Assembly (NCBI GenBank): GCA_002269645.1
Contig: NIVC01002239.1
Span: 220,325 to 284,324, forward strand
Reading direction: 5' to 3'
Origin: Macrostomum lignano
Taxonomy: Eukaryota
DNA: 64,000 nucleotides
The position numbers were made by a program, and so were the translations under genes. Numbering within the stretch: the first letter of the stretch is position 1; the number at the start of each line of letters is the position of its first letter. Positions 16,333-44,219 of this stretch are shown here, piece after piece. Under the pieces are notes generated by a model. The model saw nothing but the letters and a program-made list of their open reading frames with translations. It did no database searches and was not told the origin of the DNA.

Positions 16333-19300
16333 TCAAATCGGTGCCTCCCGAGGCTCCACCAGGATCTCGTTGACGCCCACGTGCGGCGGCTGCTGCACAG
16401 CGTACAGAATCGCCCTGGCGACGTCCTCCGGCTCAAGCATGGTGTACTTGCCCTGCCCGCTGAACTCCTTGTGCGCTTCCGAATCCGCGTCGTCCCGGCA
16501 GGCCTGCAGTTGAGCAAAGGAGATGCGGGTCATCGGGGTCGGAGCGGAGAATTGAGATAAGTGGATGGAGTTGAATTTTAGCATTAAAGCCATTCTTTTC
16601 TCTGTGGCGAAAATACAGCAGCGAAATTATCAACACAACCGGCGAGAGGCATTGCTGCCCATTCCGCCGACTCCCCGAGCAGGCACACAAGCGCGCGGAT
16701 ACGTACGCAGTCATACGCGCAGACACACCCTCACACAGGAGTGTACAGCGGCCCTGAGTTTCTAATCTTCAGGCATGTACACTTCACTGTGCCCTGGGGG
16801 TTGGCCCTCAAGGGTGTTAATTCCACGAGTAGAGCCAAGCCGATATTCCAGTTTAGCCCCAAATTAATGTGACCACACTTGGAATCGAGCCCGGGCCGCT
16901 GGCACATCAGAGTGACTGGGGAATTGCGACCGATGAACGCTAATCAAAATACGCTTGTTCAGCACTTCCTAGCTCCCATTGTCCCTTTCGGAAGATAGAA
17001 GCTTCACAAAATAGGAAATTTCATATCAACGAACAATCTACCGAAGAACTCTCTATAGCTTAACAGTAACGTTTATTTGCCATTTCGTGCTTTTGAAGTC
17101 TCGAGCAAATGAAAGGGCCGGAAAGTCTTTTTCGAGCTTGTGAAACGCTCTCTACCGTCCCTCTACAGTCATCACAGTAGGCACTCTGACTCAGCTTGCG
17201 AGGGAAAACCTGCCAGCCAGAATGAGAAGCATTAGAAATCCAGTGCCTCTTGTTCTCAAAACCTGCTCACCTGCAGCGGAGTTCTCACGTCCCCGGGCTG
17301 CACGCAGGTGACGCGAAGGCCTCGACTCGCCACCTCGAGGCGCAGGGCCCTGGAGTAGCCTTCCACGAAGAATTTGGAGCCCGTGTACACGGCCAAGCCC
17401 GGAAACGGAGCCCGACCAGCGTCGCTGCTCAAGTTGACGATGTGGCCGCCACCCCTGTCCAGCATGATGGGCAGCACGGCCTCCACCGTGTGCACCAGGC
17501 CTCGGCAGTTGACGTCGATGGTGCGGTCGGTGAGGTGCGTCAGGCCGCTGAACGCCCTGGTATAGTACATCACCCCGGCGCTGTTCACCAGGATGTCCGG
17601 CTGGCCGAGCAGCGACCGGCAGCGCGCCACGGCGGCCTCGACCTCGGCGCGGGAGGTCACGTCGGCTGGGCAGGCGACCGCCACGCCCTGCGCAGCCAGA
17701 ATGCCTTGGCGCACCTGCTCCAGCTGGTCAGCGCGCCTGGCAACCAGCGCCACCTGGCAGCCGTCTCTAGCCAGGGCCTGCGCTACCGCCTGTGGTTGTT
17801 GGGAAACAGGGACTTTTGTGCATGACTTCGGACAGCAAGCTCACTAGATGCAGGATGTTGTCTTCTTAATGCAACAATTGAAACCTCGGGATTCACATGG
17901 CGGACGGAAATTGTTGAACAATTATTGAGCTTTTCCCATTTAATTCTGAATGCGCTTTGGGACCAGGTGGAAGCTTTTTTACGGAAGAGAAATTATGGAT
18001 AGATTTTAATTCGCTAATGGCGGACATCCAAAATACATTCTACTATACTTCGACGCTTTTAATTGTACAATTCTCTATTGACCTCTCATTCACTTGCAAT
18101 ACAGTGAGGTTCTGTTCGCACCTGTCCGATTCCGCTGCTGGCCCCGGTAACCATGGCAACCTTGCCTAGCAACGCTCCGCCGGAGGTGTTTCTCCTGGCC
18201 CGCGGCAGGAGGCCCCGCTCGGCCAGGCGGGCCACGTACACGGCCAGCAGGCTGGACTCGATGGCCGGATATCCGCTCTCCAAGCCCAGGCTGGGCAGAG
18301 CAGCACGCAGCTGCCTCGAGTCAAAGGTGCTGAGCTGCCCAAAGTACTGGGATCCGCCAGACGGGGCCAGCTCCTCCAACAGGCGCAGCAGCGATGCGAT
18401 TGGCTGGCAGGCCTCAGCTAGTTGCCGCAGCTCCACCAGCCAATCAGCGTAGTCCACGCGGCGCAAGGTATAGCCGCTAACCGACAACCAATCGCAGAGC
18501 AGGTCAAAGCTGATTGGCTGCGGATTAACCAGGTGAAAAATCTTGCCAGCGTGCAGGCTGAGCTGGGCCATGGCGCGCACGATGACCTCGCTGGTAAAGT
18601 CTACCGGAGTGAACTCCAAGCGCCAGTTGAGACGGGGCGCCTGCCCACTGCGTAGCACACCCTGAAAGTCGGTGAGTAGCAAAAAGTGCTTAGTAAGTGT
18701 TCTTTCAGGAACTGCACCAGTACGCACAGCCACTCGGCAAGATAACTATGTCCATTGATACCCCCGTGGGTCCACAGCAGCAACCAACCTGCAGCATGAG
18801 CAGCGTCAGGTCCTGCGGGTTCCAGGCGGCGTTGGCCCGGTCCCCGGCTTGGTTGCCCAGCCGGTACACGATCACCGGCATGCCTCGGGCCCGAGCCTTC
18901 ATGAGCAGCTGCTCGGCCACCCATTTGGTCTGGCTGTATCCGTCGGCGAGTTCTTGAGCGTGGACGCTGGTGTCGGCGTCCTCGCGGCAGTCGGCCAGAC
19001 CGTTCGGAAACACAGCGTCGGTGCTGACATAGTGCACTGGCTTGACGCGGACCGCTGACGCAAACAGGATCACGTTCTGCGTGCCCAGCACGTTCGGTCC
19101 GTACAGAGCCTGTGAATGGTCGGAATTCAGTGCACTTTTTCTGGTTTTGTCGGTCTGTGAGTGACTGCAGAGGGCTAGCAGAGCAACTAGCATGCGCTAA
19201 AACAGCAAATAAGGAGAGTCCCTCACCGTGTACGGGTAAATAAGGTTTACGTAGGCACCAGCGTGAATCACTACGTCGATCTCGCTGCTCAGGAAGGCGT

Positions 19301-22300
19301 AGTCATCCTCTGAGAGGCCGAACTTCACCAGGCTGAGGTCTCCTGCGAATGGCGTCAGTTTTTAACAATGAGAATTGCAGTTTTCTTAGAAAACAGGTCT
19401 TGACTTCGCCAGCTTCGCCCTGATTTGCCGACACCAGGATAGGAGAAACTCTGAGGCTTCTTATATGTCTGAAATTCCCTACAGGTAGGTCGGGTTGCCC
19501 AAAACTCCAATGCGAACTTTGCAACCAGCAGCGCACTCACCCCTAATAACGGTCACCCGGGCTTCAAAAGCAGCCGCAAGGTCCTTTGTTTGATCATCCT
19601 CCTGTCCTTTGGGCCGCAAGATGAGGAACTGCTCTAGGGTAGATCTCAGCCTCCGCTGCAGGCCCCCAGGGTCGCCGCTTCCGGTCTCGCGAACCAAACA
19701 GAAGACTTGCGTTTCGGTGAGGCGCAGCAGGTCGCGCAACAGGAAGGCGCCAAGGAAGCCAGTAGCGCCGGTTAGAAGGACGCGGCCGCGGGACCAGCGC
19801 GACTTGTTGAAGTGCGGGTTGCGCCAGAATGCGCGCAGCTGGATATCCAGGCTGCCGAATGATTTGGCATGTGAGATTGGGTTAGGCACAATACTGACAT
19901 TGTCGCGACTTTCCTATTCATTTCTTAGTTCACCTTCACTTGTCTCTGTTTACTCTGTTTTCTCTCTCTCTCTCTGTCTAGCTCAATCTTGTTATTCTTA
20001 TCTCTCTTTCCCTTACTGCCTTCTGATTGGCTCTCCATTCTCGCCTCTCTCTTCAGTCGCGCACTCCACTCCCTCTCCTTATTATTCTGGGCTCAACCCC
20101 CCAAAGTTAAATGTTCAATAAATATATCGGTTTGGGCCCTGCGCCCACTTACTGGCTCCTTTAGTATTCAATTTAACATCTAATTTAGTTCTAGTGTTTT
20201 TAGTTTTATTTTCTCTACAGGCATAAAACAGGCAGGTAGGCAGATTCCAACGGCTCACTCTGAAGCCTGCGGCTGGTCATGATTGGCCACCTCGGTTTTC
20301 AAATCGAAGGTTCTCGCCTCGGCCTCCGGCGTTTCGTCGGCGGTCCCAGTGCCCCGCGCCGCCGCAGCGTCGATCAGGCGGGCCATCTCCTGCACCGTGG
20401 GGTATTGGAACAGCTCCTTCACGGACAGCTGGCAGCCCAGCTGCTCGTTCACCTTTGAGAGCAGCTTTGTCGCTAGCAGGGAGTGGCTGGAAAACGGCGA
20501 TGGTTTGGCTGCTGTGGACTGGGATTTGCCTGCGAACTTGGGTCTTTCTGCTTTGGAAAATTAAAGCAAACTGAGATCATTTTGCCCTGATCTGTTCAAA
20601 ATACAAATCTTCGAAAAAATGACCTACAGTTGCTATACGAAGTCAGCCTATCTTACCCGCCGTAGTCGAAGAAGCTCTCCTGTATGTCGATCTCCTTGAT
20701 GTCCAGTGTAGCCATCCAGATGGCCGCCAGGCTTTTCTCTGTGGCGGTCTGCGGCAGAAACGAGCAGTCCAGGCTCTCTTGGGCCTTGTCGAAGGGAGGC
20801 AGCGAGGCCTTGTCCAGCTTGCCGATCGCGCTTACGGGCAGGCTACGATGGGTGGGTAGTAAAATTTAATGACATAGGTACTGCACTGCAACTCTGTGGC
20901 TGCTCATGGTTAGCACGTTCATGTGAGCAGGCTTCCTAAGTATTCTACACAGAATCGCACTCAGACAGGGGCTCACTCGGCCAGGAAGACGAAGTAGCTT
21001 GGGATCATGTAGAACGGCAGCTTTCGTTTCAGAGCGGATCGCAGCTGCCTTTTTGTGAGGTCGCCGTTCGATGGAACAACGTACGCCACAAGGAACTTGT
21101 CCTCGCCTTCGCCGCCCTTCACCAGCACCACACAGGCGTTGACGAGCCCACTGTCCAGCAGGGCCACCTCGATCGCCTGAACCTCCACGGAGTAGCCCCG
21201 GATTTTGACCATACTGTCGCAGCGACCGCAGATCTCCAGGCTGCTGTCCGAGAGCAGGTAGCCCCAGTCGCCTGTGCGGTACAGCCGCTCACCCGCCTGG
21301 CTGCCGAGGGCTTTCGGCGCCTGAATGAACTTGCTGCGATTCAGGTCTGGGCGCTTCACGTAGCCTTTGGCCAGGGTTGGCCCGGCCACGTAGATCTGCG
21401 ATCGAGCGGAAATGGGTTTGACAGATATACGAATGCAAGTAGTCAGTCTCGGTTCAGGGTTTTTGTCATTTTTGGTCGAAACTCTATAGTAATATTGAAT
21501 TACCTCTACCGGTCCCCAACTTTTGAACGGAACTCTTACCTCTCCAGCCGCCCCCACCGGCTGCGGATTGAGCGCTTCGTCTAAGATGACCACCTGGACT
21601 CCTGGTAGCAGCCAGCCCACGGGGCAGAACTTGCGTCGTTCCTCCGGTCTGTGCTGAATCCGCTTCAGGTAGTCCGTAAGATCTCTGGCGGCCACGTCGT
21701 GACACTCGGAGATACTGTACAGGTTGATGACGCGGGTGCTGGGCAGCATTGACTGACAGCGCTCCAAGAGGCTTGTGGTAACCACCTCGCCGCAAAGCCA
21801 GATTTGCCTGTAAATGTTTTGGTGTTTCAAAGTCGCTGCCATACAATCTGGGATCATGGAACGGTGTAATGTCTATTCATTATGGAGGTATAGAAACATA
21901 GAAAATTTAGGACAAAATTTTAGTACGAACTTGAGGCTCGCGCAAGCCTCTTGAACTCTTTCCGCCTCCGAATCAAGCACCGTCTCCAGCAATGACGGCG
22001 TGAACAGCATCCGGGTGATGCAGTTTTTCCGCATATACTCCAGCAGCTTTGGTGGATCGTAGATGACATCATCGGGCACCACATAAAGGCATTGACCCTT
22101 CATCAACGGACGCAGCATCTCCCATACAAAGAAAACGTTACAGGCTTCGCGCTCCGGTCCGTTGGACTCGTCATAAGGGTAAGTCACGTGACGCCAGTGG
22201 TAGGAAAAGACAGCACCGCGGTGCGGCATGCCGATGCCTTTCGGCTTGCCGGTGGTGCCGCTGGAGTATACGATGAAGGCGAGGGCGTCCAGATCGATGG

Positions 22301-23150
22301 AGACGGGGACGCAGCTGGTGTCGCATCGCAGCTCATTGAGTTCCTGTTGCCAGTGGTCAGAGAAGACCCACGCAAGGCTGCGCGCTGATTCAGGCAAGCG
22401 CTGTAGCAGGTCGGGCTTTGTCAGCACAGCACGAGGCTCAGCATCGGACAGGACGCTCTCGATTAGCGAGTCGGGGTAGGACAAGTCCATGGGGAGGTAG
22501 GCTCCACCTGCGAATGCGACATGGGCATTTAACAATAGTAACTTCTTTCAGACCTTTCGATGTGTCTGATTTTACACGTACGTCTTCTACACCTACGGTA
22601 GCACAGCAAAGCAAGCTAAAAAACCGTTAAAGGTTTTGCGACAACTATTTTCACTACGTCATATTCCTGCTCGCGACGACGCAGCAGGCTTTGTAAGCTT
22701 GCGCTGCTTGACCCCAGCTGCTTCATGTAGTCTGTCAGTTACACTGAAAAAAACGCTTTCCATATTTGGGCCTGCCTAGACCATCCCACCCTGGTCTTAA
22801 ATCTTTCGTCAGCTTCAACTGATAATGCACTCGCGGTCATCAAATCCGTATGGAGAATAAAAGACGAGTAACTGACCGGCTTTGAGTATGGCAATGTAAG
22901 CCAGCACATACTCGATGCATCTCTCCATGTAAATGATGCCGCAGAGCTCCACATCCAGACCCTTCAGCCGGAGCTCGGCGGCCAGTTTGCTGGACAGTTG
23001 ATCCAGCTCCGCGTAGGTGAGTTGCCGTCCAGCTCCGTCCGAAACGGCGACTCGGTCTGGAGTCAGTTGAGCTTGCCTGCAGAACTGCTCGTGCAGGCTC
23101 CCCGCAGTTTGGTAGGACTCGGCTGCTGCTGCTGCTACTGGCGACGGCAT
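16333..23150 (-). CDS. NRPS-like A-T-R-SDR enzyme (~1309 aa, 12 exons), similar to fungal ATRR glycine betaine reductase
   Basis: Exons 23150-22877, 22507-21931, 21807-21540, 21395-20977, 20842-20657, 20486-20259, 19851-19541, 19342-19227, 19109-18789, 18661-18122, 17789-17271, 16503-16333 (3930 nt, all GT-AG, phases consistent). A domain: YSSGTTGKPKG, ACNVFFVWE, YRTGD, GRCDSMVKIRGYSVE, GKLDK. T domain: FFDYGGHSL. R domain: TGATGFLG, YSQTK. SDR: TGASSGIG, NSAG, YTGSK. Ends VNEILVEPREAPI. Confidence 0.93.
16625..16950 (-). mobile_element. Interspersed repeat, probable tRNA-derived SINE (family B), in ATRR-like intron 11
   Basis: Body 16625-16812 matches the reverse complement of 57262-57460; B-box-like gggctcgattcc (16881-16892) and A-box-like tagcgttcatcgg upstream on the minus strand. 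Confidence 0.6.
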
Positions 23151-23429
23151 GGTTCTTGGGACACGAGATAGTTTTGGCGTCTCCGGGAAAAGAAAGCTTT
23201 GAGCTGACCCGATACTTGGAAAGTGGATAAAGTGGATAGAGATTCTGATTTTATGCTTTGCCTCTAGGGGGCCTTGGAGTTGGGGCAGCAACTTCTGGGC
23301 TGTTGGAAAGCTGTTGGACACGAGGGAAGCGAGGAGAGAAATCCACTGTGGGCGTACTTTCGTCTCAAACTGTACTCAAGTTGCGCACAGTTGAGGGAGT
23401 AAAGCAAGTAGAGAGCTAGAAGGAAGGGA

Positions 23430-33420: not shown

Positions 33421-34762
33421 GTTTATATACATCCCTTGCTGCCTTGGTTGACAAGCAATTGAGGGTTAGGTAGGTGGATCAAGGCCTCAAGTTGACCAAT
33501 TGTTCCTGTCATACACTTGTGCATTGTTCTGTTATAAATCTCTTATAACATAATATTGATATGTTGTGTTTTATCTCTATCCAAATAGAATATAGCTTTG
33601 TTTCTTTTTAATTTCAAGGCTGCATGTATGCATCACTTCAGCCAAGGACAATTTTGGCCAAAGAGTTTGAATTGAATTTTATCTGTTTCAATAGAAAGGG
33701 AGTTTGTTTGAATTGAAGTTTTGCTTCTTTCTTTTGAACAAGACATTGTTAAAATAGGATATAAAATAGTGTACTTGTAAAGGCCCTACCTATTTTCATA
33801 CCCCCAAACTGTAAATCTGATGCATTAGACTTTCTGGGCCTACTACGCTCATATCCCATCTTTGGGTCTCTCAAACCCCATGTCCAATATGCTTGTTTTT
33901 TCTTTCCTTTCCTTGGTAGGAGGTTTGGTAACTCATGTAATAGAAGGAAGCTTTTTCTTCTTTCTAAATTCTATTGATCTCACCAAGTTCCAGGATAAAG
34001 TGATTTACTCTTATAATGATTTCACTGCTATCACCAAAGTTGTTATAGAATTCAATAGTAGAATTATATTCTAATTTCTAAGAATTATTTCTAGAATATA
34101 GTTTAACTTCCTAGTTTTTAGTTGTAATACATTTTAGTAGCATTATAAATGTATTCTGCCCTAAGTAGTTTTACTGGTACATGTACTATTTCCAGTCCTT
34201 GGCATGACCTAGTCCTAGATTAGAAGGTCACCACATTACTCTTCATATTTCTTTGCATAGACTCCTAACTTCCTTTCTTAGTAAATCTCTTCTAACTATT
34301 CCTTGGATTTTCTTACTTTAATTCAAACTAGAAAGCAAGTTGAAGTGTTGAATTTATCATTAACATTGTTTGTACAAATATGAAGTACATCAAGCAAAAT
34401 ATAAAAACAAAATAAGGAATAGCAAAAGTATGGTAAAGCAATGCATTTAGTAACAATGATTAAGGTTAGAGCTGTAGGAAGCAAGCATGCACAAAATGTT
34501 TTGGAACCCAGATAGTGTATGTGCTATTGTCTTTCGTGGTCTTTCTACTGTTAATGGCTGGGATTCACGAGGCCAAAGAGCCTCCAGTGTATGGGCAAAA
34601 GGATTTGGGACACGAGACAAATGCGTGAGCTGTAGGAGCAGGAAGATTATTTGTTTTTGCTCTTAGAATTCAAGACTTTTAGGTCTTAGTCTACTGCCTG
34701 ACGTTGAGCTAATTTGTAATTTTCTCTCCGCTGTGCCAAATGCAATTGCAGATCTGCTTGTC

Positions 34763-37700
34763 ATGGCTGGAGATGATGATGAGGAGCTCAACAGTGCCGC
34801 AGAGGTGTACTCCTGTTTCCGCCACATCGAGCTGTTGCCAGGCGCCAAGCCTCATCCTGGCAACGTGGTTGAGTCTGACTGCCTAGCAACCGTCGACCTG
34901 CCGCCCGCTGTGTTCCCCCTGGCCGACTCGCTGCCCAGTGAGGCCGTCACCGAGGGCCGGCTGAGCTCCCTGCAGCTGCAGGGCGTGCTGTACGCCTGCC
35001 AGCGCCACCGGACTCTGCTGCCTGGCGGCGAGCGGGCCGGCTTCTTCATCGGGGATGCCGCGGGAGTCGGCAAGGTAACTGTGGGAGAAATTGTCGAGCT
35101 GAGCTCAATGAGGCGTGCCTGAGTCGGAGTCTAGGATTTGTTTTGTTGATGATTTTTCGAGTTGGAATAATGGGATTTAGATTAAGGCAGTGGACTCCGG
35201 TTGGGGAGCTGACTCGTACGAGTGTGGCCCAAAGGCGTGCGTTCTGCCACCCCCTCCCCACTCTGTGGCCACTCTTGGCCGATGCGAGGTGTATTTTGTT
35301 GTTGTATTGCAGTTGGGATGACGAGACTAGTTTGCATGACGGGACTCTAGTTTGCATGACGGGACTCTAGTTTGCATGACGGGACTCTAGTTTGCATGAC
35401 GGGACTCTAGATGGGATGGCGGGACTAGTTGGGATGAAAGGATTTGAGTTCGTCGGAGGGGAAGCCAGTATTAGTTCTGAAGCCAATCAAAGCAGTCAGT
35501 CGGGCTGATCCGCCTCCGCAGGGCCGCCAGATTGCGGCGATAATCCTGGACAGTCTGGCCCGGGGCCGGCCGCGCCACCTGTGGCTGAGTGTGTCGCCAG
35601 ACCTCGCCCAGGACGCCAGGCGGGACCTGTTGGCCATCGGCTGCCATGCCCGCGTCATCGACGGCTGCCGGCAGCTGGACCGGTCGGCCACGGCGTTCGG
35701 CCTGGCCAAGGACTGCCGCGAGGGCGTCCTGTTCAACACCTACGCCTGTCTGGTGTCGGGCGGCTCCGGCGCCAGCCGCAAGACCCGCCTTGAGCAGCTT
35801 ATCGACTGGTGCTCCGGCGACTCGGCGCCAGCCAAATTCGACGGCTGTCTCGTGCTGGACGAGTGCCACCGCGCCAAGCACTTCCTGCCGGACGCCAAGG
35901 AGGCCGCCAACTCCAAGGTAGCTGCGGCTGTCATTGAACTGCAGCAGCGGCTGCCGCTGGCACGAGTGGTTAGTGAGCTTCTGGAATCCCTGAACTGGCA
36001 CTGAGAATCTCCCTGAACTGGCATTGAAAATCTCCCTGAACTGGCACTGAGAATATACCTGAACTGGCACTGAGAAAATACCTGAACTGGCACTGAGAAT
36101 ATACCTGAACTGGCACTGAGAATATACCTGAACTGGCACTGAGAATCTCCCTGAACTGGCACTGAGAATATACCTGAACTGGCACTGAAAATCTCCCTAA
36201 ACTGGCACTGAGAATCTCCCTGAACTGGCACTGAGAATCTCCCTGAACTGGCACTGAGAATCTCCCTGAACTGGCACTGAGAATATACCTGAACTGGCAC
36301 TGAGAATCTCCCTGAACTGGCACTGAGAATATACCTGAACTGGCACTGAGAATATACCTGAACTGGCACTGAGAATATACCTGAACTGGCACTGAGAATA
36401 TACCTGAACTGGCACTGAGAATATACCTGAACTGGCACTGAGAATATACCTGAACTGGCACTGAGAATATACCTGAACTGGCACTGAGAATCTCCCTGAA
36501 CTGGCACTGAGAATATACCTGAACTGGCACTGAAAATCTGCCTGAACTGGCACTGAAAATCTCCCTAAACTGGCACTGAAAATCTCCCTAAACTGGCACT
36601 GAAAATCTCCCTAAACTGGCACTGAAAATCTCCCTGAACTGGCACTGAAAATCTCCCTAAACTGGCACTGAAAATCTCCCTAAACTGGCACTGGAATCCC
36701 ACAAACTTCGCCGACACCCCAGGTGTACTGCAGCGCCACAGGTGTATCGGAGCTGAAAAACCTGGCCTACATGACCCGGCTTGGCCTGTGGGGCCCCAGC
36801 CGCCCCTTCGCCAGCTTCCAGGATTTCCGCGGCCTGTTGGAGCGCCGCGGCCTGGCTGCAGCGGAGATGCTGGCCGCCGAGCTGAAGGCCACTGGCGTGT
36901 ACGTGGCCCGCGGCCTGTCCTTCCGGGACGCCGAGTTCGCCATTGTGGACGCGCCGCTCACGACCGGCGACATTGCGCTGTATGACTCCGCGGCTGCTCT
37001 GTGGCGACGAGTGAGCACTGGGGTGGGACGGGGCCCGACTCAGTGTCATGTCATGTCTTATATCATTTCATTGATGTCTAATGTCATTTCACTAATTTCT
37101 AATGTCATTCCACTGATGCCTAATGTCATTTTACTGATGCCTAATGTCATTCCACTGGTGCCTAATGTCATTCCACTTCCACTGATGCCTGATGTCATTC
37201 CACTGGTGCCTAATGTCATTCCACTTCCACTGGTGCCTGATGTCATTCCATTGATGCCTGATGTCATTCCACTGATGCCTGATGTCATTCCACTGATGCC
37301 TGATGTCATTCCATTGATGCCTGATGTCATTCCACTGGTGCCTAATGTCATTCCACTTCCACTGGTGCCTGATGTCATTCCATTGATGCCTGATGTCATT
37401 CCACTGGTGCCTAATGTCACTCTGTCGAAGAAAATTTTCGCGCCGTTAATTCCCAGCGTCACTTCGCTGATGCCCAATGCCATTTAATCTTTACAAAATA
37501 TCGCTTCAATTGAGTCAAATGTTATTCCACTTGCGCCTAATGTCACTCCAATCTCCCCCGCCCCCGCAGATTCACTCCAGCCTGCTCCGCGCCTGCTCCC
37601 TGTGCCGAGTTCGCTCTCCAGGCCAGCACCTGCGCAGCTACTGGTCCGCCCACCAGCGCTTTTTCCTGCAGCTCTGCCTGTCGCTGCGGGTGCCCGCCGT

Positions 37701-40700
37701 GCTGGCTGAGGCCAAGCGGGCCCTGGACATCGGCCTCTGCCCTGTGCTGGGCCTGCAGAGCACCGGAGAAGCCGGCCTGCACGCCTCCGCCGATCTGCAG
37801 TCGCCCTCCGGCTTCGTGTCGGTTTGTCGACACGTGTGCCGGCAGTTCCTGCTGTCGCACTTCCCCGCCGTGTCCACCCTGACTGGCCAGCCCGAGACCT
37901 GGAGCAGCGGCGAGAGACAGCGCCTGCTGGACGAGCTGGAGGCCTGCGAGCTGCCGGCCGGGGGACTCGACCTGCTCATTGACGGCCTTGGGGGGCCTGA
38001 CGATGTGGCAGAAATGACAGGTAGTAGAAACTTGGGGTTTTCATATGTAATTAGTCCTGTGCGATTCTGTGGGAGAATCAGGATCTCATCTGGTGTCTGA
38101 TTGGCCCTGTGGGAGAATCGGGATCCCATCTGGTGTCTGATTGGCCCTGTGGGAGAATCGGGATCTCACCTGGTGTCTGATTGGCCCTGTGCAGGCCGGC
38201 GCAGCCGCATCATCCGCTGCAAGGGCCGCGGCGGCTTTCGCCTGGAGAGCCGGTACGCGGAGAGCGGCGATGCGCAGAGCGTGAACGCCAGCGAGCGGCA
38301 GCGCTTCATGGCGGGCCAGAAGCTGGCGGCCGTCATCTCGGATGCGGCCTCCACCGGCATCAGTCTGCACGCCGACCCTGGCTGTGCCAACACCCGCCGG
38401 CGGGTGCACGTGACCGCCGAGCTGCCCTGGTCTGCCGAGAAAGCGGTGAGGCCCGATGCACTGTAGTCTGAATGCCGATCCTAATTAGAAAGCATGCAGG
38501 ATTTTGTGAATATCCCATTGGGTAGCTTTGTGAATATCCCATTGGGTAGCTTTGTGAATATCCCATTGGGTAGCTTTGTGAATATCCCATTGGGTAGCTT
38601 TGTGAATATCCCATTGGGTAGCTTTGTGAATATCCCATTGGGTAGCTTTGTGAATATCCCATTGGGTAGCTTTGTGAATATCCCATTGGGTAGCTTTGTG
38701 AATATCCCATTGGGTAGCTTTGTGAATATCCCATTGGGTAGCTTTGTGAATATCCCATTGGGTAGCTTTGTGAATATCCCATTGGGTAGCTTTGTGAATA
38801 TCCCATTGGGTAGCTTTGTGAATATCCCATTGGGTAGCTTTGTGAATATCCCATTGGGTAGCTTTGTGAATATCCCATTGGGTAGCTTTGTGAATATCCC
38901 ATTGGGTAGCTTTGTGAATATCCCATTGGGTAGCTTTGTGAATATCCCATTGGGTAGCTTTGTGAATATCCCATTGGGTAGCTTTGTGAATATCCCATTG
39001 GGTAGCTTTGTGAATATCCCATTGGGTAGCTTTGTGAATATCCCATTGGGTAGCTTTGTGAATATCCCATTGGGTAGCTTTGTGAATATCCCATTGGGTA
39101 GCTTTGTGAATATCCCATTGGGTAGCTTTGTGAATATCCCATTGGGTAGCTTTGTGAATATCCCATTGGGTAGCTTTGTAAATATCCCATTTGGATGGTA
39201 ATCTATTGTCGTTCCTTTTTGGTATTTCTCAGTCACATTTGGGATAATAAATATGGGATTTGTATCTGCAACAGCTCGGTCATTCCTGAGCATCCCAAAT
39301 CCCAACTCAGGTGCAGCAGCTGGGCCGCACGCACCGCTCAGGCCAGTCCAGCGGCCCCGTCTACCGCCTGGTCTGCCTGGACCTGGCCGGCGAGCGCCGC
39401 TTCTGCTCCGGTGTTGCCAAGCGGCTGCAGACTCTGGGCGCCCTGACCAAGGCCGACCGGCGGGCCGCCCTGGTTGGCGACCTCGGCCACCTCAACTGTG
39501 ACACCGGCCGCGGCAGGGCGGCCCTGCGCCGGCTGTATCAGTACACTGCGGCCGGCCGCCTGCTGCGGGGCGTAAGCCTGCCGGAGGTCTTCGACGGCGA
39601 GGTCTCGACTGAGCAGGAGGGCGTGCGGGTGAGCATACAGGAGGAGTCATGTTTGAGAGGCATGAAGTTGGGAGTTGGGAGAGTCATGGCTAATGTGAGA
39701 GTCATGGCTCAGGTGAGAGTCATGGCTCAGGTGTTGAAGGCATAGCTCAGGTGAGAGTCATGGCTAAGGTGAGAGTTATGGCTCAGGTGTTGAAGGCATA
39801 GCTCAGGTGAGAGTCATGGCTAAGGTGAGAGTTATGGCTCAGGTGAGAGTCATGGCTCAGGTGTTGAAGGCATAGCTCAGGTGAGAGTCATGGCTCAGGT
39901 AGGAGAGTCATGGCTAAGGTGAGAGTCATGGCTCAGGTGAGAATCATGGCTCAGGTGTTGAAGGCATAGCTCAGGTGAGAGTCATGGCTAAGGTGAGAGT
40001 GAGTCATTGCTCAGGTGAGAGTCATGGCTAAGGTGAGAGTCATGGCTAAGGTGTGAAAGGCATAGCTCAGGTGAGAGTCATTGCTCAGGTAGGAGAGTCA
40101 TGGCTAAGGTGAGAGTCATGGCTCAGGTGAGAATCATGGCTCAGGTGTTGAAGGCATAGCTCAGGTGAGAGTCATGGCTAAGGTGAGAGTGAGTCATTGC
40201 TCAGGTGAGAGTCATGGCTAAGGTGAGAGTCATGGCTAAGGTGTGAAAGGCATAGCTCAGGTGAGAGTCATTGCTCAGGTAGGAGAGTCATGGCTCAGGT
40301 GAGAGTCATGGCTCAGGTGAGAGTCATGGCTCAGGTGAGAGTCATGGCTCAGGTGAGAGTCATGGCTCAGAGTCACCAGAGAAGAATCCGAACTTTCCGT
40401 TAACTTTACGAGCTCGTAATTTGAAACGCCGCTCCCACCTTGGCCCCGCAGCGGCTGCAGGCCTGCCTGCTGGACATGGACATCTTCGAGCGCCTTGCCG
40501 AGCCCAGCGGCAAGTGTCGCCTCCGCGATGGCGAGACGGGCTCGGTGAATCGCTTCCTGAACAGGCTGCTGGGGCTGCCGGTGGCTGAGCAGGCCTGTCT
40601 GTTCCGCTACTTTCTGGCCGCCTGCGGGCTCGAGCCCGCGCCCGGCTTTGGTGAGCGACCTGCACTGACTGCTGCTCCCATTCCCTGTCTTCCCATCTTC

Positions 40701-42222
40701 CCATCCATCTCCCCTATCTTCCCACCCATCTCCCCTATCTTCCCACCCATCTCCTCTATCTTCCCATCCATCTCCTCTATCTTCCCACCCATCTCCCCTA
40801 TCTTCCCACTCATCTCCCCTATCTTCCCATCCATCTCCTCTATCTTCCCACCCATCTCCTCTATCTTCCCACCCATCTCCCCTATCTTCCCACCCATCTC
40901 CTCTATCTTCCCACCCATCTCCTCTATCTTCCCACCCATCTCCCCTATCTTCCCACCCATCTCCTCTATCTTCCCATCCATCTCCTCTATCTTCCCACCC
41001 ATCTCCTCTATCTTCCCATCCATCTCCTCTATCTTCCCACCCATCTCCTCTATCTTCCCACCCATCTCCCTATCTTCCCACCCATCTCCTCTATCTTCCC
41101 ACCCATCTCCCCTATCTTCCCATCCATCCCATCTGTCTTCAAATCCTGTCTTCATGTCCTCCATTTCTTCCAGTATGAAAGTTTTGTGACGAATAGAAAG
41201 TCTATTCGTCCATGCACCTATGCGAGTGCGAGCTCTCCCTCCCCATCGCCAGCACTCGAATTCCCAAATCCCCTCCCGCAGGCCCCGCAGACGCCGCTTC
41301 TCCCAGCTCACCTCTGGCGGCATCGGCGACAGCAGACGACGACTGCCTGGCGGAGCTGCGCGCCGACTCCATCCGGCTGGTGTCGCCGCCAGCCGAGGCG
41401 TTTCAGCAGAGCTGCCTGCCGGCCGGCCTGCTGTCCCGCCAGGTCACCGCCGTCACCCTGGAGATCACCAGGAGGCTGCGGCGCCGGCAGCCTCACCAGA
41501 GCCAGCAGCGGACTCCGCAGCGCACAGTGACTGAGCGGCTCACCCTGCTCTGCGGCTCCGTGCTGCCGCTGCTGCCCGCGCTGGAGGCCTGCCTGGCCGC
41601 CAACTGGGCCGCCCTGCGAGGCCTGCCCGCCTCTCGTCGTCGCCTGCGGTTCCTGCGAGCCCGCGTCGACGCCGATAGCGAAGCCGACCCCGACGCCGCT
41701 GGCGGCAGCCGTCGGTTTGTTGGCCTCCGATTCCCCGCTGCGCTGCTGCGGGCCGCCGAGGCGGAGCTGGGGCGCCGGCGGCTGCTGGCCCAGCAGGCGG
41801 AGGCCGCCTCTGGACCGACGGCAGCTTCAGCGGCGGCCGGCGCAGCGAAGGAGGAGGCTGTGGCGCCGGTAGACGAGCGGCTGAAGCGCCGGGCAACCAC
41901 GGCACCGCCAACCATTCGAAGCTTTTTCGCTCCGGCGGCCGCTGCGCCTTCACCTTCGCCCTCGCCAGTTCATGCCGCGGCGGCCAGCAAGCGGAAGAGC
42001 TGTGGAGCAGCGGCGGCCGCCCCCAGCCCGGCCAAGCAGGCCCGCATCAGCGACCTGTTCGCCGCCAGGCAGCCGGACGAGTCGGTCTGCCCGAACTGCG
42101 ACAAGCAGCTGCCGGCCTCCGTGCGGCCCCGGGACCACTGGGCCGTCTGCCTCGTTGTGGGGGCCAGCGGCCCGGCCGGTGCGGAACCAAAGCAAGAGAA
42201 ACTGGACAGAGATGCAGCTTAG
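34763..42222 (+). CDS. SBNO: Strawberry notch (SBNO/sno family) SF2 helicase-like protein (~1068 aa, 8 exons) with C-terminal PIP-like motifs and UBZ-type finger
   Basis: Exons 34763-35074, 35522-35968, 36723-37010, 37570-38020, 38195-38445, 39311-39628, 40452-40650, 41282-42222, phases consistent. Motifs GFFIGDAAGVGKGRQIA, DECHRAK, RVVYCSATG, YWSAHQRFF, GLQSTGEA, ELPWSAEKAVQQLGRTHRS, RFLNRLLGL. The 5' start may be preceded by another exon. Confidence 0.93.
35326..35412. repeat. SBNO intron 1: 20-bp tandem (tttgcatgacgggactctag) x~4
   Basis: Direct copies. Confidence 0.9.
35988..36692. repeat. SBNO intron 2: 23-bp minisatellite (cctgaactggcactgagaat(ata/ctc)) x~30
   Basis: Direct copies. 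Confidence 0.97.
37045..37420. repeat. SBNO intron 3: 21-bp minisatellite (gtcattccactgatgcctaat) with variants
   Basis: Direct copies. Confidence 0.93.
38071..38190. repeat. SBNO intron 4: 40-bp unit x3 abutting the acceptor
   Basis: gggagaatc(a/g)ggatc..tggtgtctgattggccctgt at 38071, 38111 and 38151, followed by gcag and exon 5. Confidence 0.95.
38500..39192. repeat. SBNO intron 5: near-perfect 24-bp minisatellite (tttgtgaatatcccattgggtagc) x~29
   Basis: Essentially identical units. Confidence 0.98.
39680..40370. repeat. SBNO intron 6: 18-bp minisatellite (gtgagagtcatggctcag) with higher-order variants
   Basis: Direct copies; junctions read CAG/GTGAG. Confidence 0.95.
40690..41130. repeat. 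SBNO intron 7: 21-bp pyrimidine-rich minisatellite (cccacccatctcctctatctt)
   Basis: Direct copies. Confidence 0.95.
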
Positions 42223-42311: not shown

Positions 42312-42408
42312 TGGCTGTGTACAGGTGGCATACCAGGTGATGGCTGTGTACAGGTGGCATACCAGGTGATGGCTGTGTACAGGTGGTATACCAGGTGATG
42401 GCTGTGGG
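42312..42408. repeat. 29-bp tandem (gctgtgtacaggtggcataccaggtgatg) x3 in the SBNO 3' region
   Basis: Direct copies. Confidence 0.85.
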
Positions 42409-42724: not shown

Positions 42725-44087
42725 TACTTACTTACTACCGACGGGGGGCAGAGCGCCGCGAATAGGCCGCGAGGCCCCTATCGCAACCCCAAGCTAAAAA
42801 CAGAAAGGCGTTAGCCTTGGGGCTGCGCCCACCCCTCGCCGGCAGCAGAAGAGCTCGCGAGAGTGGCGTCTGCGATCTTCATCCGCCCAGAATCCCGAAC
42901 GAATGCGCGTAGGTCACGGATCCGGTCCGGAGTGGTGAGTTCGTCAAGCCTTAGCGGATGACCGAGGTGATGCCTCCGCGCCTCGTTGAAGTGCGGGCAG
43001 AAAGTGACGTGGTGCGTCGAGGTTTCCTCTTCTAAATCACAGAATGGGCAGATAGGGGAGCAGCCACTTTGCAGTGAAATGTCTCTGGAAGAAGCCATGG
43101 CCAGTAATGACCATGCACATCTCCCTGAGGTTAGTTTTACTTAAGAAGATTAGATATTCGGATACTTTCCGGTTAATGGCAGGCATAGCCTTTCGTGCTT
43201 GCCGGTATTCGGAGCAGCTGTCCCAGTGAGTCTGATGCTGGCGGTTCAGCCAATCTTGAATGGCGCGGTTGAGCGATGACTTCGGAGAAGGTAACTTGAC
43301 TGAGCGTTGCGCTCCATCAGGGGTGCAACCCCGCTTGGCAAGCTGATCCACAAGCTCGTTGCCGAGGATGTTGCTATGGCCTGGTGTCCAGATAACATTG
43401 ATCCTGTTGAGAATCGCTAGGGTCTGCAAGCTTTTGAGGCAGTCTGAAACTGACTTGGTTGAGAGCTTGATGGAAGACAAGGCCTTAATAGCGGCCTGGC
43501 TGTCAGAGTAAAAATAAATGTCAAAGCTGCTGATGCCAGCTTTGTGCAAATGCTCAGCGCACTGGTTGATAGCTACAACTTCGGATTGAAAAACCGAGAC
43601 ATTCTCACCAAGATGAAGACTCTCCTGTAAGATCGCCTCACCCTTGTGGAAAATGGCAATGCCTGCACCAGCGAGACCGTCACACAGGGATCCGTCAGTG
43701 AAGCAGTGAATACCTTGGCTTCTCCGGTTGATGCCCACGTCCAGCGGGTGACTCCCTCTCGGTGGAAGAGTACACTTGAAGCCCCTCCTGAGGATGAGAG
43801 TGGGGGATTTGCAGTCCACCTCGTCTAAATTGAGGTGGATGCGTTGAAGATCGCGACGGATGTAGTCCAGATGCGGGAAATGAGTCTTCTCGGGCATGAA
43901 GCCTGAGAGCATGTTAGCAATAAATTTATCACAGATGAGACGCGTGGCGCCCTTCATCGCCTCAGCTCTAATGAACAAATGCAGCGGAGGCATGCTGAGG
44001 ATGGTGTTGAGCCCCTCGTAAGGGGTGGATGGATACGCACCGGTGATGGCTCGGCAGATGTTACCCTGCAGTTGGTACAACCGGTCC
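42725..44087 (-). mobile_element. 5'-truncated non-LTR retrotransposon with RNase H and CCHC finger (I/R1/LOA-like), young insertion
   Basis: RNase H FTDGS..., [31 protein letters not shown]; [18 protein letters not shown]; (TAAG)n tail; identical 17-bp TSD ttttgtcgtgtattact at 42708-42724 and 44088-44104; one frameshift near 43085. Confidence 0.93.
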
Positions 44088-44219
44088 TTTTGTCGTGTAT
44101 TACTGGATTCCGCACCGCCTACTTCTAGTAATAGAATGCGGTCCACTGTCTTATATTCCGCTAAAAAATAAGGATTGACAAGCTGGTGACCAGAGATAAT
44201 GACTATTTTAACCAAGTGG

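What the first reader, a model, noticed from the sequence alone, without database searches (positions are those of the whole stretch)
41900..42150. Strawberry notch protein ending in two PIP-box-like motifs and a UBZ-type zinc finger
Seen: the last exon encodes PPTIRSFF (41905-41928), KQARISDLF (42034-42060) and CPNCDKQLPASVRPRDHWAVC (42088-42150). Known: Qxx(I/L)xxFF-type motifs bind PCNA, CPxC...H...C fingers (UBZ4) bind ubiquitin, and the pair marks DNA-damage-tolerance factors such as SPRTN and Pol kappa. SBNO1/2 are known as transcriptional regulators without these modules. Inference: an SBNO paralogue recruited to ubiquitinated PCNA, i.e. a candidate undescribed replication/repair SF2 ATPase.
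Basis: partly seen in the sequence, partly recalled or inferred. Interest (0 to 1): 0.7.

Follow-up and report, generated by a model that had tools for sequence, protein, structure and literature searches.

The report
Strawberry-notch paralogue with PCNA/ubiquitin-type tail
The flatworm gene in this window belongs to an old, unstudied sister lineage of the Strawberry-notch ATPases; its members end in a conserved PCNA-box-like motif plus a ubiquitin-binding zinc finger, as DNA-damage-tolerance factors do, but the flatworm's own finger has lost the residues that normally touch ubiquitin.

Summary
The last exon (41282-42222, + strand) of an eight-exon Macrostomum lignano Strawberry-notch-family gene encodes PPTIRSFF, KQARISDLF and CPNC-x12-H-x3-C at the stated coordinates, 23 residues before the stop.

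The motifs are not chance. In a clade of 127 homologues, 101 have a long C-terminus:
- 86 carry P-x-T-[ILM]-x-x-F-F-K-P.
- 57 end in a zinc finger. Its profile hits the Pol kappa, RAD18, WRNIP1 and FAAP20 UBZ4 fingers first in the PDB.
- 31 of those 57 have Q-x-x-[ILMV]-x-x-x-F just upstream of the finger.

Green-algal members carry a UBA domain where the finger would be.

The clade includes molluscs, echinoderms, amphioxus, cnidarians, sponges, green algae, stramenopiles and a euglenid. It is separate from Sno/SBNO1/2/FGT1. M. lignano, Nucella and Bryopsis each have both gene types. No vertebrate, insect, nematode or land-plant member was seen.

One caveat applies to this gene. The M. lignano finger keeps the four zinc ligands but is the only one of 57 without the Asp of H-x-D-x-C. 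It also has CPNC instead of CP[IV]C, so its ubiquitin binding is doubtful.

PCNA and ubiquitin binding are inferred, not shown. No paper linking Strawberry notch to a UBZ was found.

The parts
34754..35074 (+). Exon 1 (5' end unresolved; first in-frame ATG at 34763). Encodes the start of the AAA_34 ATPase domain up to the Walker A motif GDAAGVGK.
   Evidence: The GTG 'start' at 34733 in the ORF listing comes from the bacterial start-codon rule and does not mark a eukaryotic start.
35522..35968 (+). Exon 2, AAA_34 continued, with the DECH box (LVLDECHRAKH).
   Evidence: AG/GT borders.
36723..37010 (+). Exon 3, end of AAA_34.
37570..38020 (+). Exon 4, the linker and the start of Helicase_C_4.
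38195..38445 (+). Exon 5, Helicase_C_4.
39311..39628 (+). Exon 6, Helicase_C_4 including motif VI (QQLGRTHRSGQ).
40452..40650 (+). Exon 7, end of Helicase_C_4 (internal QACLFRYF motif); donor G|GTGAGC.
41282..42222 (+). Exon 8, the last exon. It holds a divergent C-terminal domain followed by the disordered tail with the three motifs, and ends in the stop TAG at 42220-42222.
   Evidence: It is 100% identical over 941 nt to the copy in assembly GCA_002269645.1, where the preceding intron is 97.3% identical.
41851..41934 (+). Conserved tail block EEAVAPVDERLKRRATTAPPTIRSFFAP. The family consensus is vE..tPV[DN].K...KA...P.T[ILM]..FF[KR]P.
   Evidence: AlphaFold gives pLDDT 89-96 here, with helices over ERLKRRAT and IRSFF.
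41905..41928 (+). PPTIRSFF, PIP-like motif 1: positions 4, 7 and 8 fit the PIP-box consensus, and position 1 is Pro instead of Gln.
   Evidence: 86 of 101 clade members with a long C-terminus have [ILMV]xxFF here, and 6 of them have Q at position 1.
41992..42000 (+). KRK basic patch, the counterpart of the KKR/KR patch (possible nuclear localisation signal) upstream of motif 2 in homologues.
42034..42060 (+). KQARISDLF, PIP-like motif 2 (Q1, I4, L7, F8).
   Evidence: 31 of 57 finger-bearing homologues have Qxx[ILMV]xxxF within 45 residues upstream of the finger, for example QSNLATMF, QSSIMASF and QQTLVSLF.
42088..42150 (+). CPNCDKQLPASVRPRDHWAVC, a C2HC finger at the position of the family's terminal UBZ4. 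The zinc ligands are kept and the ubiquitin-contact residues are lost.
   Evidence: AlphaFold predicts a beta-beta-alpha fold with pLDDT 82-87.
42151..42219 (+). 23-residue extension after the finger (LVVGASGPAGAEPKQEKLDRDAA). In most finger-bearing homologues (52 of 60) the protein ends 2-5 residues after the last Cys; the rest run 6-18.

Best explanation
The window encodes the Macrostomum lignano member of an ancient second lineage of Strawberry-notch SF2 ATPases. This lineage is distinct from Sno/SBNO1/SBNO2/FGT1.

Shown: the ATPase core (Walker A, DECH box, motif VI) is intact. The hallmark of the lineage is a disordered C-terminal tail that carries, in fixed order:
1. A ~28-residue conserved block ending in P-x-T-[ILM]-x-x-F-F-K-P.
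2. A basic patch followed, in animals, by Q-x-x-[IL]-x-x-x-F.
3. A terminal ubiquitin-binding module: a UBZ4 finger in most lineages, a UBA domain in green algae.

Inferred: the tail works as a two-part address label, as in Pol eta/kappa, SPRTN, SNM1A and the translocase ZRANB3. The FF motif or motifs would dock on the PCNA clamp, or on another PIP-like-motif receptor of genome maintenance. The terminal module would read ubiquitin on the clamp or on neighbouring chromatin. Together they would bring the ATPase motor to stalled or damaged replication sites.

In M. lignano both FF-type motifs are kept. The finger retains only its zinc ligands, so here the ubiquitin half of the label is probably weakened or lost and recruitment would rest on the FF motifs.
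For: - Gene and family: AAA_34 plus Helicase_C_4. An eight-exon GT-AG model equals the deposited protein P0001.
- Paralogy: M. lignano has P0151 (canonical) as well as this gene. Nucella has P0154 and P0004. Bryopsis has P0149 and P0067. An NJ tree on 649 core columns and 214 sequences separates a 125-127-member tail clade from the canonical animal and streptophyte FGT1 clades. Bootstrap support for the tail clade is 76%.
- FGT1-type proteins have Zn_ribbon_FGT1 domains and a PHD finger. The tail clade does not.
- Tail conservation: 86 of 101 members have [ILMV]xxFF, 57 of 101 have a finger, 56 of 57 fingers have H-x-D-x-C, and 31 of 57 have the Q-motif.
- UBZ4 identity of the family finger: the top PDB hits are Pol kappa UBZ1/2, RAD18, WRNIP1 and FAAP20, with E from 2e-7 to 3e-6. 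33 of 40 fingers hit Pfam UBZ_FAAP20.
- Non-homologous replacement by a UBA domain at the same terminal position in chlorophytes (P0067 UBA at 1135-1168 of 1172). This argues that ubiquitin binding is the selected property.
- PIP boxes lacking Q1 or an aromatic at position 7/8 are known to work, and PIP plus a ubiquitin-binding domain marks TLS polymerases, SNM1A, ZRANB3, FAN1 and WRNIP1 (PMC6116012).
- AlphaFold on the tail gives a confident FF block and a beta-beta-alpha finger.
Against: - No binding datum exists for any member.
- The FF motif has Pro, not Gln, at position 1 in 72 of 86 members. It sits inside a longer conserved block with no counterpart in known PIP boxes, so its receptor could be something else.
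- A profile of the FF block finds nothing significant in the PDB. The best hit is Claspin 312-321, E 1.9.
- UBZ4 and UBA domains also work outside PCNA biology.
- The characterised relatives (Sno, SBNO1/2, FGT1) act in transcription and chromatin remodelling (PMC5040591).
- For M. lignano itself, the finger scores only 9 bits against the family profile. It lacks the Pro-Val/Ile loop residue and the Asp at H+2 that the WRNIP1/RAD18 class uses to contact ubiquitin (PMC4370504).
- Foldseek matches to the tail model are not significant, best E 1.8.
- The AlphaFold confidence depends on the alignment supplied.
Confidence: 0.5

Rival explanations
1. The tail is a chromatin and transcription address label, not a clamp label. 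The ubiquitin reader would recognise ubiquitylated histones or transcription or remodelling factors, and the FF block would bind a non-PCNA partner. The paralogue would then do the same kind of job as Sno/SBNO/FGT1 (co-activator, nucleosome remodelling helper), but under ubiquitin control.
For: - The characterised relatives act at promoters and interact with SWI/SNF and ISWI remodellers (PMC5040591).
- The FF motif lies in a 28-residue conserved block that is longer than a PIP box.
- Position 1 is Pro in 72 of 86 members.
- UBZ and UBA domains are general ubiquitin readers (PMC4370504).
Against: - The P-x-T-[ILM]-x-x-F-F-K-P core fits positions 4, 7 and 8 of the PIP consensus, and six members have the canonical Q.
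- Animals carry a second, Q-initiated PIP-like motif next to the finger.
- The closest finger relatives by profile are all DNA-damage-tolerance proteins.
- The canonical, transcription-linked paralogues lack the tail.
Confidence: 0.3
2. In M. lignano the finger still works despite its divergence. It would bind ubiquitin in a different mode (the 'third group' of UBZs), or it would have been re-used for another ligand. The full PIP-plus-ubiquitin logic would then apply to this gene.
For: - All four zinc ligands are kept with UBZ4 spacing (C-x2-C-x12-H-x3-C).
- AlphaFold predicts a beta-beta-alpha fold with pLDDT 82-87.
- The exon is identical in two assemblies while the neighbouring intron differs.
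- UBZs without the canonical contact residues exist (PMC4370504).
Against: - It is the only one of 57 fingers without H-x-D-x-C.
- It has CPNC instead of CP[IV]C, its helix half is three residues shorter, and it does not align to the family profile.
- It has no Pfam UBZ hit even at E<=1.
- D-to-A changes at ubiquitin-contacting aspartates abolish binding in FAAP20 (PMC4370504).
Confidence: 0.2
3. The motifs are chance matches in a low-complexity, GC-rich reading frame, or the exon is not part of the mRNA, so nothing functional is encoded.
For: - Short motifs of this kind are frequent: 61 [ILMV]xxFF matches in the six-frame translation of the window.
- The exon is Ala/Pro-rich.
- One database model (P0122) departs from this frame right after PPTIRSFF.
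Against: - The block, basic patch, Q-motif, finger and stop come in the same order as in homologues from many phyla.
- The splice sites are canonical and in phase, and the model is identical to the deposited protein.
- No stop codon occurs for 313 codons.
- P0122 has several other frame departures and retained-intron-like stretches.
Confidence: 0.02

Closest known systems
Strawberry notch / SBNO1, SBNO2 / LET-765 / plant FORGETTER1 (canonical SBNO lineage)
   Same: The same SF2 ATPase core: Pfam AAA_34 plus Helicase_C_4, and in most relatives the SBNO alpha/beta domain. About 40% identity over the core.
   Different: A separate clade, with both gene types present in one species. The tail lineage has a short N-terminus and no FGT1 zinc ribbons or PHD finger. 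It carries the C-terminal tail with FF motifs and a UBZ4 or UBA module, which 22 of 24 canonical-clade members lack. The RefSeq label 'FORGETTER 1-like' is a best-hit name and does not indicate orthology.
ZRANB3 (SNF2-type translocase recruited to polyubiquitylated PCNA)
   Same: An SF2 motor combined with a PIP-type motif and a ubiquitin-binding zinc finger in one polypeptide (PMC6116012). This is the closest functional analogue of what is proposed here.
   Different: ZRANB3 has a different ATPase family (SNF2 versus SBNO) and a different finger (NZF versus UBZ4), and it also has an APIM motif and an HNH nuclease. There is no sequence homology outside the general SF2 fold. Binding is shown for ZRANB3 and only inferred here.
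C-terminal tails of Pol eta, Pol kappa, SPRTN and SNM1A (PIP box plus UBZ)
   Same: A disordered tail with a non-canonical PIP box lacking Q1 plus a UBZ. The family finger profile hits both Pol kappa UBZ4 fingers as the best PDB match. The core x-T-[IL]-x-x-F-F-K-P recalls the Pol eta C-terminal PIP; this last point is from my own memory and was not checked here.
   Different: In those proteins the tail is attached to a polymerase, a protease or a nuclease, not an SBNO ATPase. The order here is FF motif, then finger at the very C-terminus. The M. lignano finger lacks the ubiquitin-contact residues.
WRNIP1 and RAD18 UBZ4 fingers
   Same: The family consensus CP[IV]C...N.H[ILV]D.CL matches this class, including the Pro-Val/Ile loop and the Asp at H+2 (PMC4370504).
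   Different: The M. lignano copy has CPNC and HWAVC. WRNIP1 is an AAA+ ATPase with the finger at its N-terminus.
Srs2 / PARI type (PIP-like motif plus SUMO-interaction motif)
   Same: Many protist members of the tail clade that lack a finger end in one or two x-T-[IM]-x-S-F-F motifs followed by an acidic-flanked hydrophobic stretch that looks like a SUMO-interaction motif.
   Different: This rests on pattern matching only. It does not apply to M. lignano, and the helicase family is unrelated.

Membership tests
Strawberry-notch (SBNO) SF2 ATPase family | AAA_34 (PF13872) N-terminal ATPase lobe with Walker A and a DExH box | tested here: met
   P0001, which equals the window model: AAA_34 E 1.8e-109 over residues 33-344. 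GDAAGVGKGRQ and LDECHRAKH are read in the translation.
Strawberry-notch (SBNO) SF2 ATPase family | Helicase_C_4 (PF13871) C-terminal lobe | tested here: met
   E 7.8e-82 over residues 485-748.
Strawberry-notch (SBNO) SF2 ATPase family | SBNO alpha/beta domain (PF25373) after the helicase lobes | tested here: inconclusive
   No Pfam hit in P0001 at E<=0.01, whereas P0029, P0025, P0067, P0151 and P0136 all hit. The M. lignano segment is about 70 residues shorter and divergent. No profile-profile comparison was run.
Canonical Sno/SBNO1/SBNO2 orthologue group | Groups with Drosophila Sno and vertebrate SBNO in a tree of the ATPase core | tested here: not met
   The window protein lies in a separate clade, with 76% bootstrap support for that clade. 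M. lignano's canonical gene is P0151.
FORGETTER1 (plant FGT1) orthologue group | N-terminal FGT1 zinc ribbons (PF23547, PF23548) and a PHD finger between the lobes | tested here: not met
   These are present in Marchantia P0136 and absent from P0001, P0029, P0025 and P0067. Streptophyte sequences group with the canonical lineage.
UBZ4 ubiquitin-binding zinc finger | C-x2-C ... H-x3-C zinc ligands in a beta-beta-alpha fold | tested here: met
   CPNC-x12-H-x3-C at 42088-42150. AlphaFold predicts two short strands plus a helix with pLDDT 82-87. Zinc binding itself was not tested.
UBZ4 ubiquitin-binding zinc finger | Sequence similarity to UBZ4 profiles | tested here: not met
   The M. lignano finger has no Pfam UBZ hit at E<=1. 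It scores 9.1-9.8 bits against the profile of 39 family fingers, with only the first knuckle aligned. The family profile itself is met: Pol kappa, RAD18, WRNIP1 and FAAP20 at E 2e-7 to 3e-6, and 33 of 40 fingers hit PF15750.
UBZ4 ubiquitin-binding zinc finger | Ubiquitin-contact residues of the WRNIP1/RAD18 class: a hydrophobic residue after Pro in the CPxC loop, and Asp at H+2 | tested here: not met
   M. lignano has CPNC and HWAVC. 56 of 57 other clade fingers have H-x-D-x-C. The roles of these residues are from PMC4370504.
UBZ4 ubiquitin-binding zinc finger | Binds ubiquitin | not testable with these tools
   This needs pull-down, SPR or NMR experiments.
PIP box (PCNA-interacting peptide) | Q1-x-x-[ILMV]4-x-x-[FYH]7-[FYH]8 (PMC6116012) | tested here: inconclusive
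   PPTIRSFF has positions 4, 7 and 8 but Pro at position 1. QARISDLF has positions 1, 4 and 8 but Leu at position 7. Both fit the 'non-canonical' classes that PMC6116012 lists as functional in other proteins. Six homologues have a fully canonical version of motif 1.
PIP box (PCNA-interacting peptide) | Lies in a disordered region and binds the PCNA interdomain connector loop | not testable with these tools
   The flanks are low-complexity Ala/Pro/Ser. Structure prediction of a complex with PCNA was not available, and the binding assay was not done.

The most novel reading that the evidence does not exclude
Eukaryotes ancestrally had two Strawberry-notch motors. The second one is lost from vertebrates, insects, nematodes, land plants and yeasts, and so has never been studied. 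It would be a clamp-guided, ubiquitin- or SUMO-guided DNA or chromatin translocase of replication-stress tolerance. It would be addressed by a PIP-like motif plus an exchangeable modifier reader: UBZ4 in most lineages, UBA in green algae, and SIM-like tails in several protists.
Probability: 0.3. Interest if true: 0.8.

Novelty: new variant of a known kind. Interest (0 to 1): 0.62.

Why it matters
If the tail does what its parts do elsewhere, this is a widespread and ancient ATPase of DNA-damage tolerance or replication-coupled chromatin maintenance. It would have escaped notice because every classical model organism lacks it.

It would add an SBNO-type motor to the short list of enzymes recruited by modified PCNA (ZRANB3, HLTF/Rad5, WRNIP1). 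It would also give the poorly understood Strawberry-notch ATPase fold a second, testable cellular context.

The idea can be tested directly in tractable species that have the gene: Hydra, Clytia, Hydractinia, sea urchins, amphioxus, oysters, green algae, and M. lignano itself.

There is also a practical point. RefSeq and UniProt names for these proteins ('FORGETTER 1-like', 'strawberry notch homolog 1') hide the fact that they are neither.

Tried and rejected
- Pfam scan of the M. lignano tail for UBZ models: only weak zinc-ribbon noise. The finger's identity rests on positional homology.
- Homologue search with the last exon alone: wasted. Low-complexity words swamped the candidate list and only a 218-residue fragment came back, so no close relatives (other Macrostomum species) were available to test short-range conservation.
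- PDB sequence search with the whole protein: no solved SBNO structure.
- Foldseek of the tail model against the PDB: nothing significant, best E 1.8. UBZ fingers of TAX1BP1, NDP52, WRNIP1 and RAD18 head the list, but at E values that mean nothing.
- Profile of the 15-residue FF core against the PDB: nothing significant. The best hit is Claspin 312-321 KTIHDFFKRK at E 1.9. The motif is too short for this test.
- Comparison of the two assemblies for dN/dS: the exon is identical, so there is no information beyond 'not diverged'.
- Supplementary tables of the M. lignano neoblast/germline transcriptome paper: no SBNO entry. Literature searches for an SBNO link to UBZ, PCNA or repair found nothing relevant.
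- The bacterial promoter/terminator scan and the bacterial start-codon ORF calls do not apply to this eukaryotic locus.
- A Rev1-interacting-region reading of the FF motif was considered and thought unlikely. Pro sits two residues after FF in 44 of 86 members, and such regions need a helix there; that requirement is from my own knowledge and was not tested.
- The first splice-junction scripts used search windows that were too narrow and gave wrong junctions. This was corrected.
Full report
**What is there**

The window is Macrostomum lignano DNA. The best database match to the gene is the deposited protein BOX15_Mlig026843g2 (P0001). Its locus in assembly GCA_002269645.1 is 96-99% identical to the window.

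On the + strand between about 34750 and 42222 lies an eight-exon gene. All its introns are GT-AG, and its conceptual translation equals P0001 except for one Asp/Glu difference. Exons 1-7 encode the two lobes of a Strawberry-notch-type SF2 ATPase: Pfam AAA_34 at E 1.8e-109 and Helicase_C_4 at E 7.8e-82. The Walker A motif, the DECH box and motif VI are intact.

The last exon (41282-42222) is entered through a canonical acceptor in the correct phase. It reads, near its end: EEAVAPVDERLKRRATTAPPTIRSFF ... SKRKS ... KQARISDLF ... CPNCDKQLPASVRPRDHWAVC ... 23 residues ... stop.

**Is it more than chance?**

Not on the motifs alone. The six-frame translation of the window holds 61 [ILMV]xxFF, 7 Q-type and 2 C2HC matches. 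The evidence comes from comparison with homologues.

Among the 120 best homologues, about 60 have a C2HC finger 2-5 residues from the C-terminus, and about 85 have x-T-[ILM]-x-x-F-F some 50-300 residues upstream of it.

Within the clade defined below, 101 members have a sufficiently long C-terminus:
- 86 have the FF motif. The consensus is P-[VK]-T-[ILM]-x-x-F-F-K-P, and six have Q at position 1, which makes a canonical PIP box.
- 57 have the finger.
- 31 of those 57, all those I inspected being animals, have Q-x-x-[ILMV]-x-x-x-F within 45 residues upstream of the finger, preceded by a KKR-type basic patch.

The M. lignano motifs align to these features one for one and in the same order. The FF motif is the end of a ~28-residue conserved block, vE..tPV[DN].K...KA...P.T[ILM]..FF[KR]P. 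AlphaFold models that block with pLDDT 89-96 even in the isolated tail, though with an alignment that I supplied.

**What the finger is**

A profile of 40 family fingers (consensus CPIC...F.....N...N.HID.CL) finds known UBZ4 fingers as its five best PDB matches:
- both UBZ4 fingers of Pol kappa, E 2e-7
- RAD18, E 2e-7
- WRNIP1, E 7e-7
- FAAP20, E 3e-6

In addition, 33 of the 40 fingers hit Pfam UBZ_FAAP20. The family finger is therefore a UBZ4 of the WRNIP1/RAD18 type. According to the FAAP20 structural paper, that type contacts ubiquitin through the Pro-Val of the CPVC loop and an Asp two residues after the His (PMC4370504).

In chlorophyte green algae the finger is absent and a UBA domain sits at the same extreme C-terminus. 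In Bryopsis P0067 the UBA spans residues 1135-1168 of 1172. Replacement of one ubiquitin reader by an unrelated one is good evidence that ubiquitin binding is what selection maintains at this position.

**The M. lignano finger is the odd one out**

It keeps Cys, Cys, His and Cys with UBZ4-like spacing and is predicted to fold as beta-beta-alpha with pLDDT 82-87. In other respects it departs from the family:
- It has CPNC instead of CP[IV]C.
- It is three residues shorter before the His.
- It lacks the near-invariant Asn.
- It has HWAVC where 56 of the other 57 fingers have H-x-D-x-C.
- Against a profile of the other 39 fingers it scores 9 bits, and only its first knuckle aligns.
- Pfam sees no UBZ in it.
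- It is followed by a 23-residue extension, where relatives stop after 2-5 residues.

Its identification as a UBZ therefore rests on position and ancestry. Whether it still binds ubiquitin is doubtful.

**Which Strawberry-notch is this?**

An exhaustive HMMER search of 1.84 billion cluster representatives and name look-ups gave reference points:
- Drosophila Sno (P0146, P0148)
- vertebrate SBNO2 (P0159, P0170), hagfish and lamprey
- a tapeworm SBNO1 (P0137)
- Marchantia 'protein strawberry notch' with a PHD finger and FGT1 zinc ribbons (P0136), and other streptophytes
- a second M. lignano gene, Mlig015939 (P0151, 1367 residues), which ends right after the SBNO alpha/beta domain

A neighbour-joining tree on 649 core columns of 214 sequences puts the window protein in a clade of 125-127 sequences. 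These come from molluscs, echinoderms, amphioxus, annelids, a nemertean, bryozoans, cnidarians, sponges, Trichoplax, a choanoflagellate, chlorophytes and prasinophytes, stramenopiles, a euglenid and others. The clade is separate from the canonical animal clade and from its streptophyte FGT1 relatives.

Bootstrap support for the tail clade is 76%, and 68% for the canonical animal clade. This is NJ with a simple distance, so the support is moderate.

Three species demonstrably carry both types: M. lignano, the whelk Nucella lapillus and the alga Bryopsis. Of 24 canonical-clade members, 22 have neither a finger nor a tail FF motif.

No vertebrate, insect, nematode or land-plant sequence appeared in the tail clade, although protist members outrank every canonical sequence in both searches. 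This points to loss in those lineages, but I did not search their genomes directly. The RefSeq name 'FORGETTER 1-like' is thus a best-hit label. True FGT1 orthologues belong to the other lineage.

**How it most likely works**

Shown:
- an intact SF2 ATPase core
- a disordered C-terminal tail
- three conserved short modules in fixed order
- a terminal module that is a UBZ4 by profile, or a UBA

Inferred, by analogy with Pol eta/kappa, SPRTN, SNM1A, WRNIP1 and especially the translocase ZRANB3 (PMC6116012): the FF motif or motifs bind the PCNA clamp and the terminal module binds ubiquitin on or near it. Together they would address the motor to stalled or damaged replication sites.

PMC6116012 notes that PIP boxes lacking Q1 (Pol eta, kappa, iota, PARG, RNASEH2B) or lacking an aromatic at position 7 or 8 (Pol iota, FANCM, TRAIP, Srs2) are functional. 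The deviations seen here therefore do not exclude PCNA binding.

The main rival is that the same tail addresses the protein to ubiquitylated chromatin in a transcription or remodelling context, in keeping with what is known of Sno, SBNO and FGT1 (PMC5040591). In that case the FF block would bind a different partner. The block is longer than a PIP box and usually starts with Pro.

I put the clamp-plus-ubiquitin reading at about 0.5 for the family and the chromatin/transcription reading at about 0.3. For M. lignano specifically, I think it more likely than not that the ubiquitin half is weakened or lost.

**Novelty**

No paper in the searchable library holds both 'strawberry notch' and 'UBZ'. 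The FGT1 paper and the SBNO papers I opened describe only helicase domains and, for FGT1, a PHD finger.

Databases already carry fragments of the picture: a precomputed UBZ_FAAP20 hit on one sponge protein, and 'UBA domain-containing protein' names on algal members. The architecture, the separate lineage and its distribution appear to be undescribed. I rate it as a new variant of a known kind, namely an SF2 motor with a PIP-type motif and a ubiquitin reader.

**Limits**

- All functional statements are inference.
- The tree is distance-based.
- The absence from model organisms rests on ranked searches, not genome scans.
- No close relative of M. lignano was available to judge whether the degenerate finger is under constraint.
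- The 5' end of the gene is not resolved. The first in-frame ATG is at 34763, and P0001 is annotated as partial.

Noticed in passing
window 35327-35426, 35987-36698, 37063-37419, 38067-38191, 38503-39191, 39679-40370, 40695-41140: Every intron of the gene carries a minisatellite, with periods of 18-40 bp (longer periods are also reported for some arrays), up to 37 copies and 79-99% matches. Examples are a 24-bp unit repeated 28.7 times at 99% and a 23-bp unit repeated 31 times. These arrays produce the long repetitive 'ORFs' on both strands in the ORF list.
   Followed up: partly
window 42312-42406: A 29-bp unit (TGGCTGTGTACAGGTGGCATACCAGGTGA) repeated 3.3 times lies about 90 nt after the stop codon, presumably in the 3' UTR.
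   Followed up: no
window 20973-23321 (- strand): The upstream neighbour on the opposite strand is a split gene for an AMP-binding (adenylate-forming) enzyme. Three ORF pieces cover Pfam AMP-binding and AMP-binding_C.
   Followed up: partly
window 43037-44215 (- strand), also 42811-43098: A 392-residue ORF with an RNase H domain lies just downstream of the gene and is probably part of a retroelement. The adjacent 95-residue ORF has a CPFC...H...C pattern, which is the only other match to the finger pattern in the window.
   Followed up: partly
P0002 (UniRef A0A1I8I7C1) mapped to window 18795-23150 and 34751-40649: This database gene model fuses the SBNO gene to about 575 residues translated from the + strand opposite the AMP-binding gene, and it stops before the last exon. 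It looks like a chimeric or spurious model.
   Followed up: partly
P0122 versus P0001 (corresponds to window ~38195-41930): Another M. lignano model is 94% identical but has several frame departures. One falls immediately after PPTIRSFF and would remove the second motif and the finger. This could be an assembly or annotation error or a damaged second copy. Its DNA was not on record.
   Followed up: partly
window 41284-41830 (protein residues ~760-940 of P0001): The region where relatives have the SBNO alpha/beta domain (PF25373) gives no Pfam hit in M. lignano and is about 70 residues shorter. The flatworm protein is the most divergent member of its clade (48-50% identity to the nearest homologues).
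   Followed up: no
P0123, P0127, P0129-P0131, P0152, P0153, P0185, P0218, P0219, P0225, P0069, P0114 (C-termini): Many protist members without a finger end in one or two x-T-[IM]-x-S-F-F motifs followed by an acidic-flanked hydrophobic stretch, for example VVVDLANSDDD, PIVIELD and EPIDLTADD. These look like SUMO-interaction motifs. Two members have both a finger and such an end. This rests on pattern matching only.
   Followed up: partly
P0197 (Hyalella azteca, canonical clade): One canonical-clade arthropod protein ends in ...KKSSLPNFFENVPVEDDDDDIIMLS, an FF motif plus an acidic or SIM-like end. Tail-type modules are therefore not strictly confined to the second lineage.
   Followed up: no
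window 41289-41290: A second AG lies 9 nt downstream of the last-exon acceptor and would give an in-frame alternative acceptor that removes three residues.
   Followed up: no
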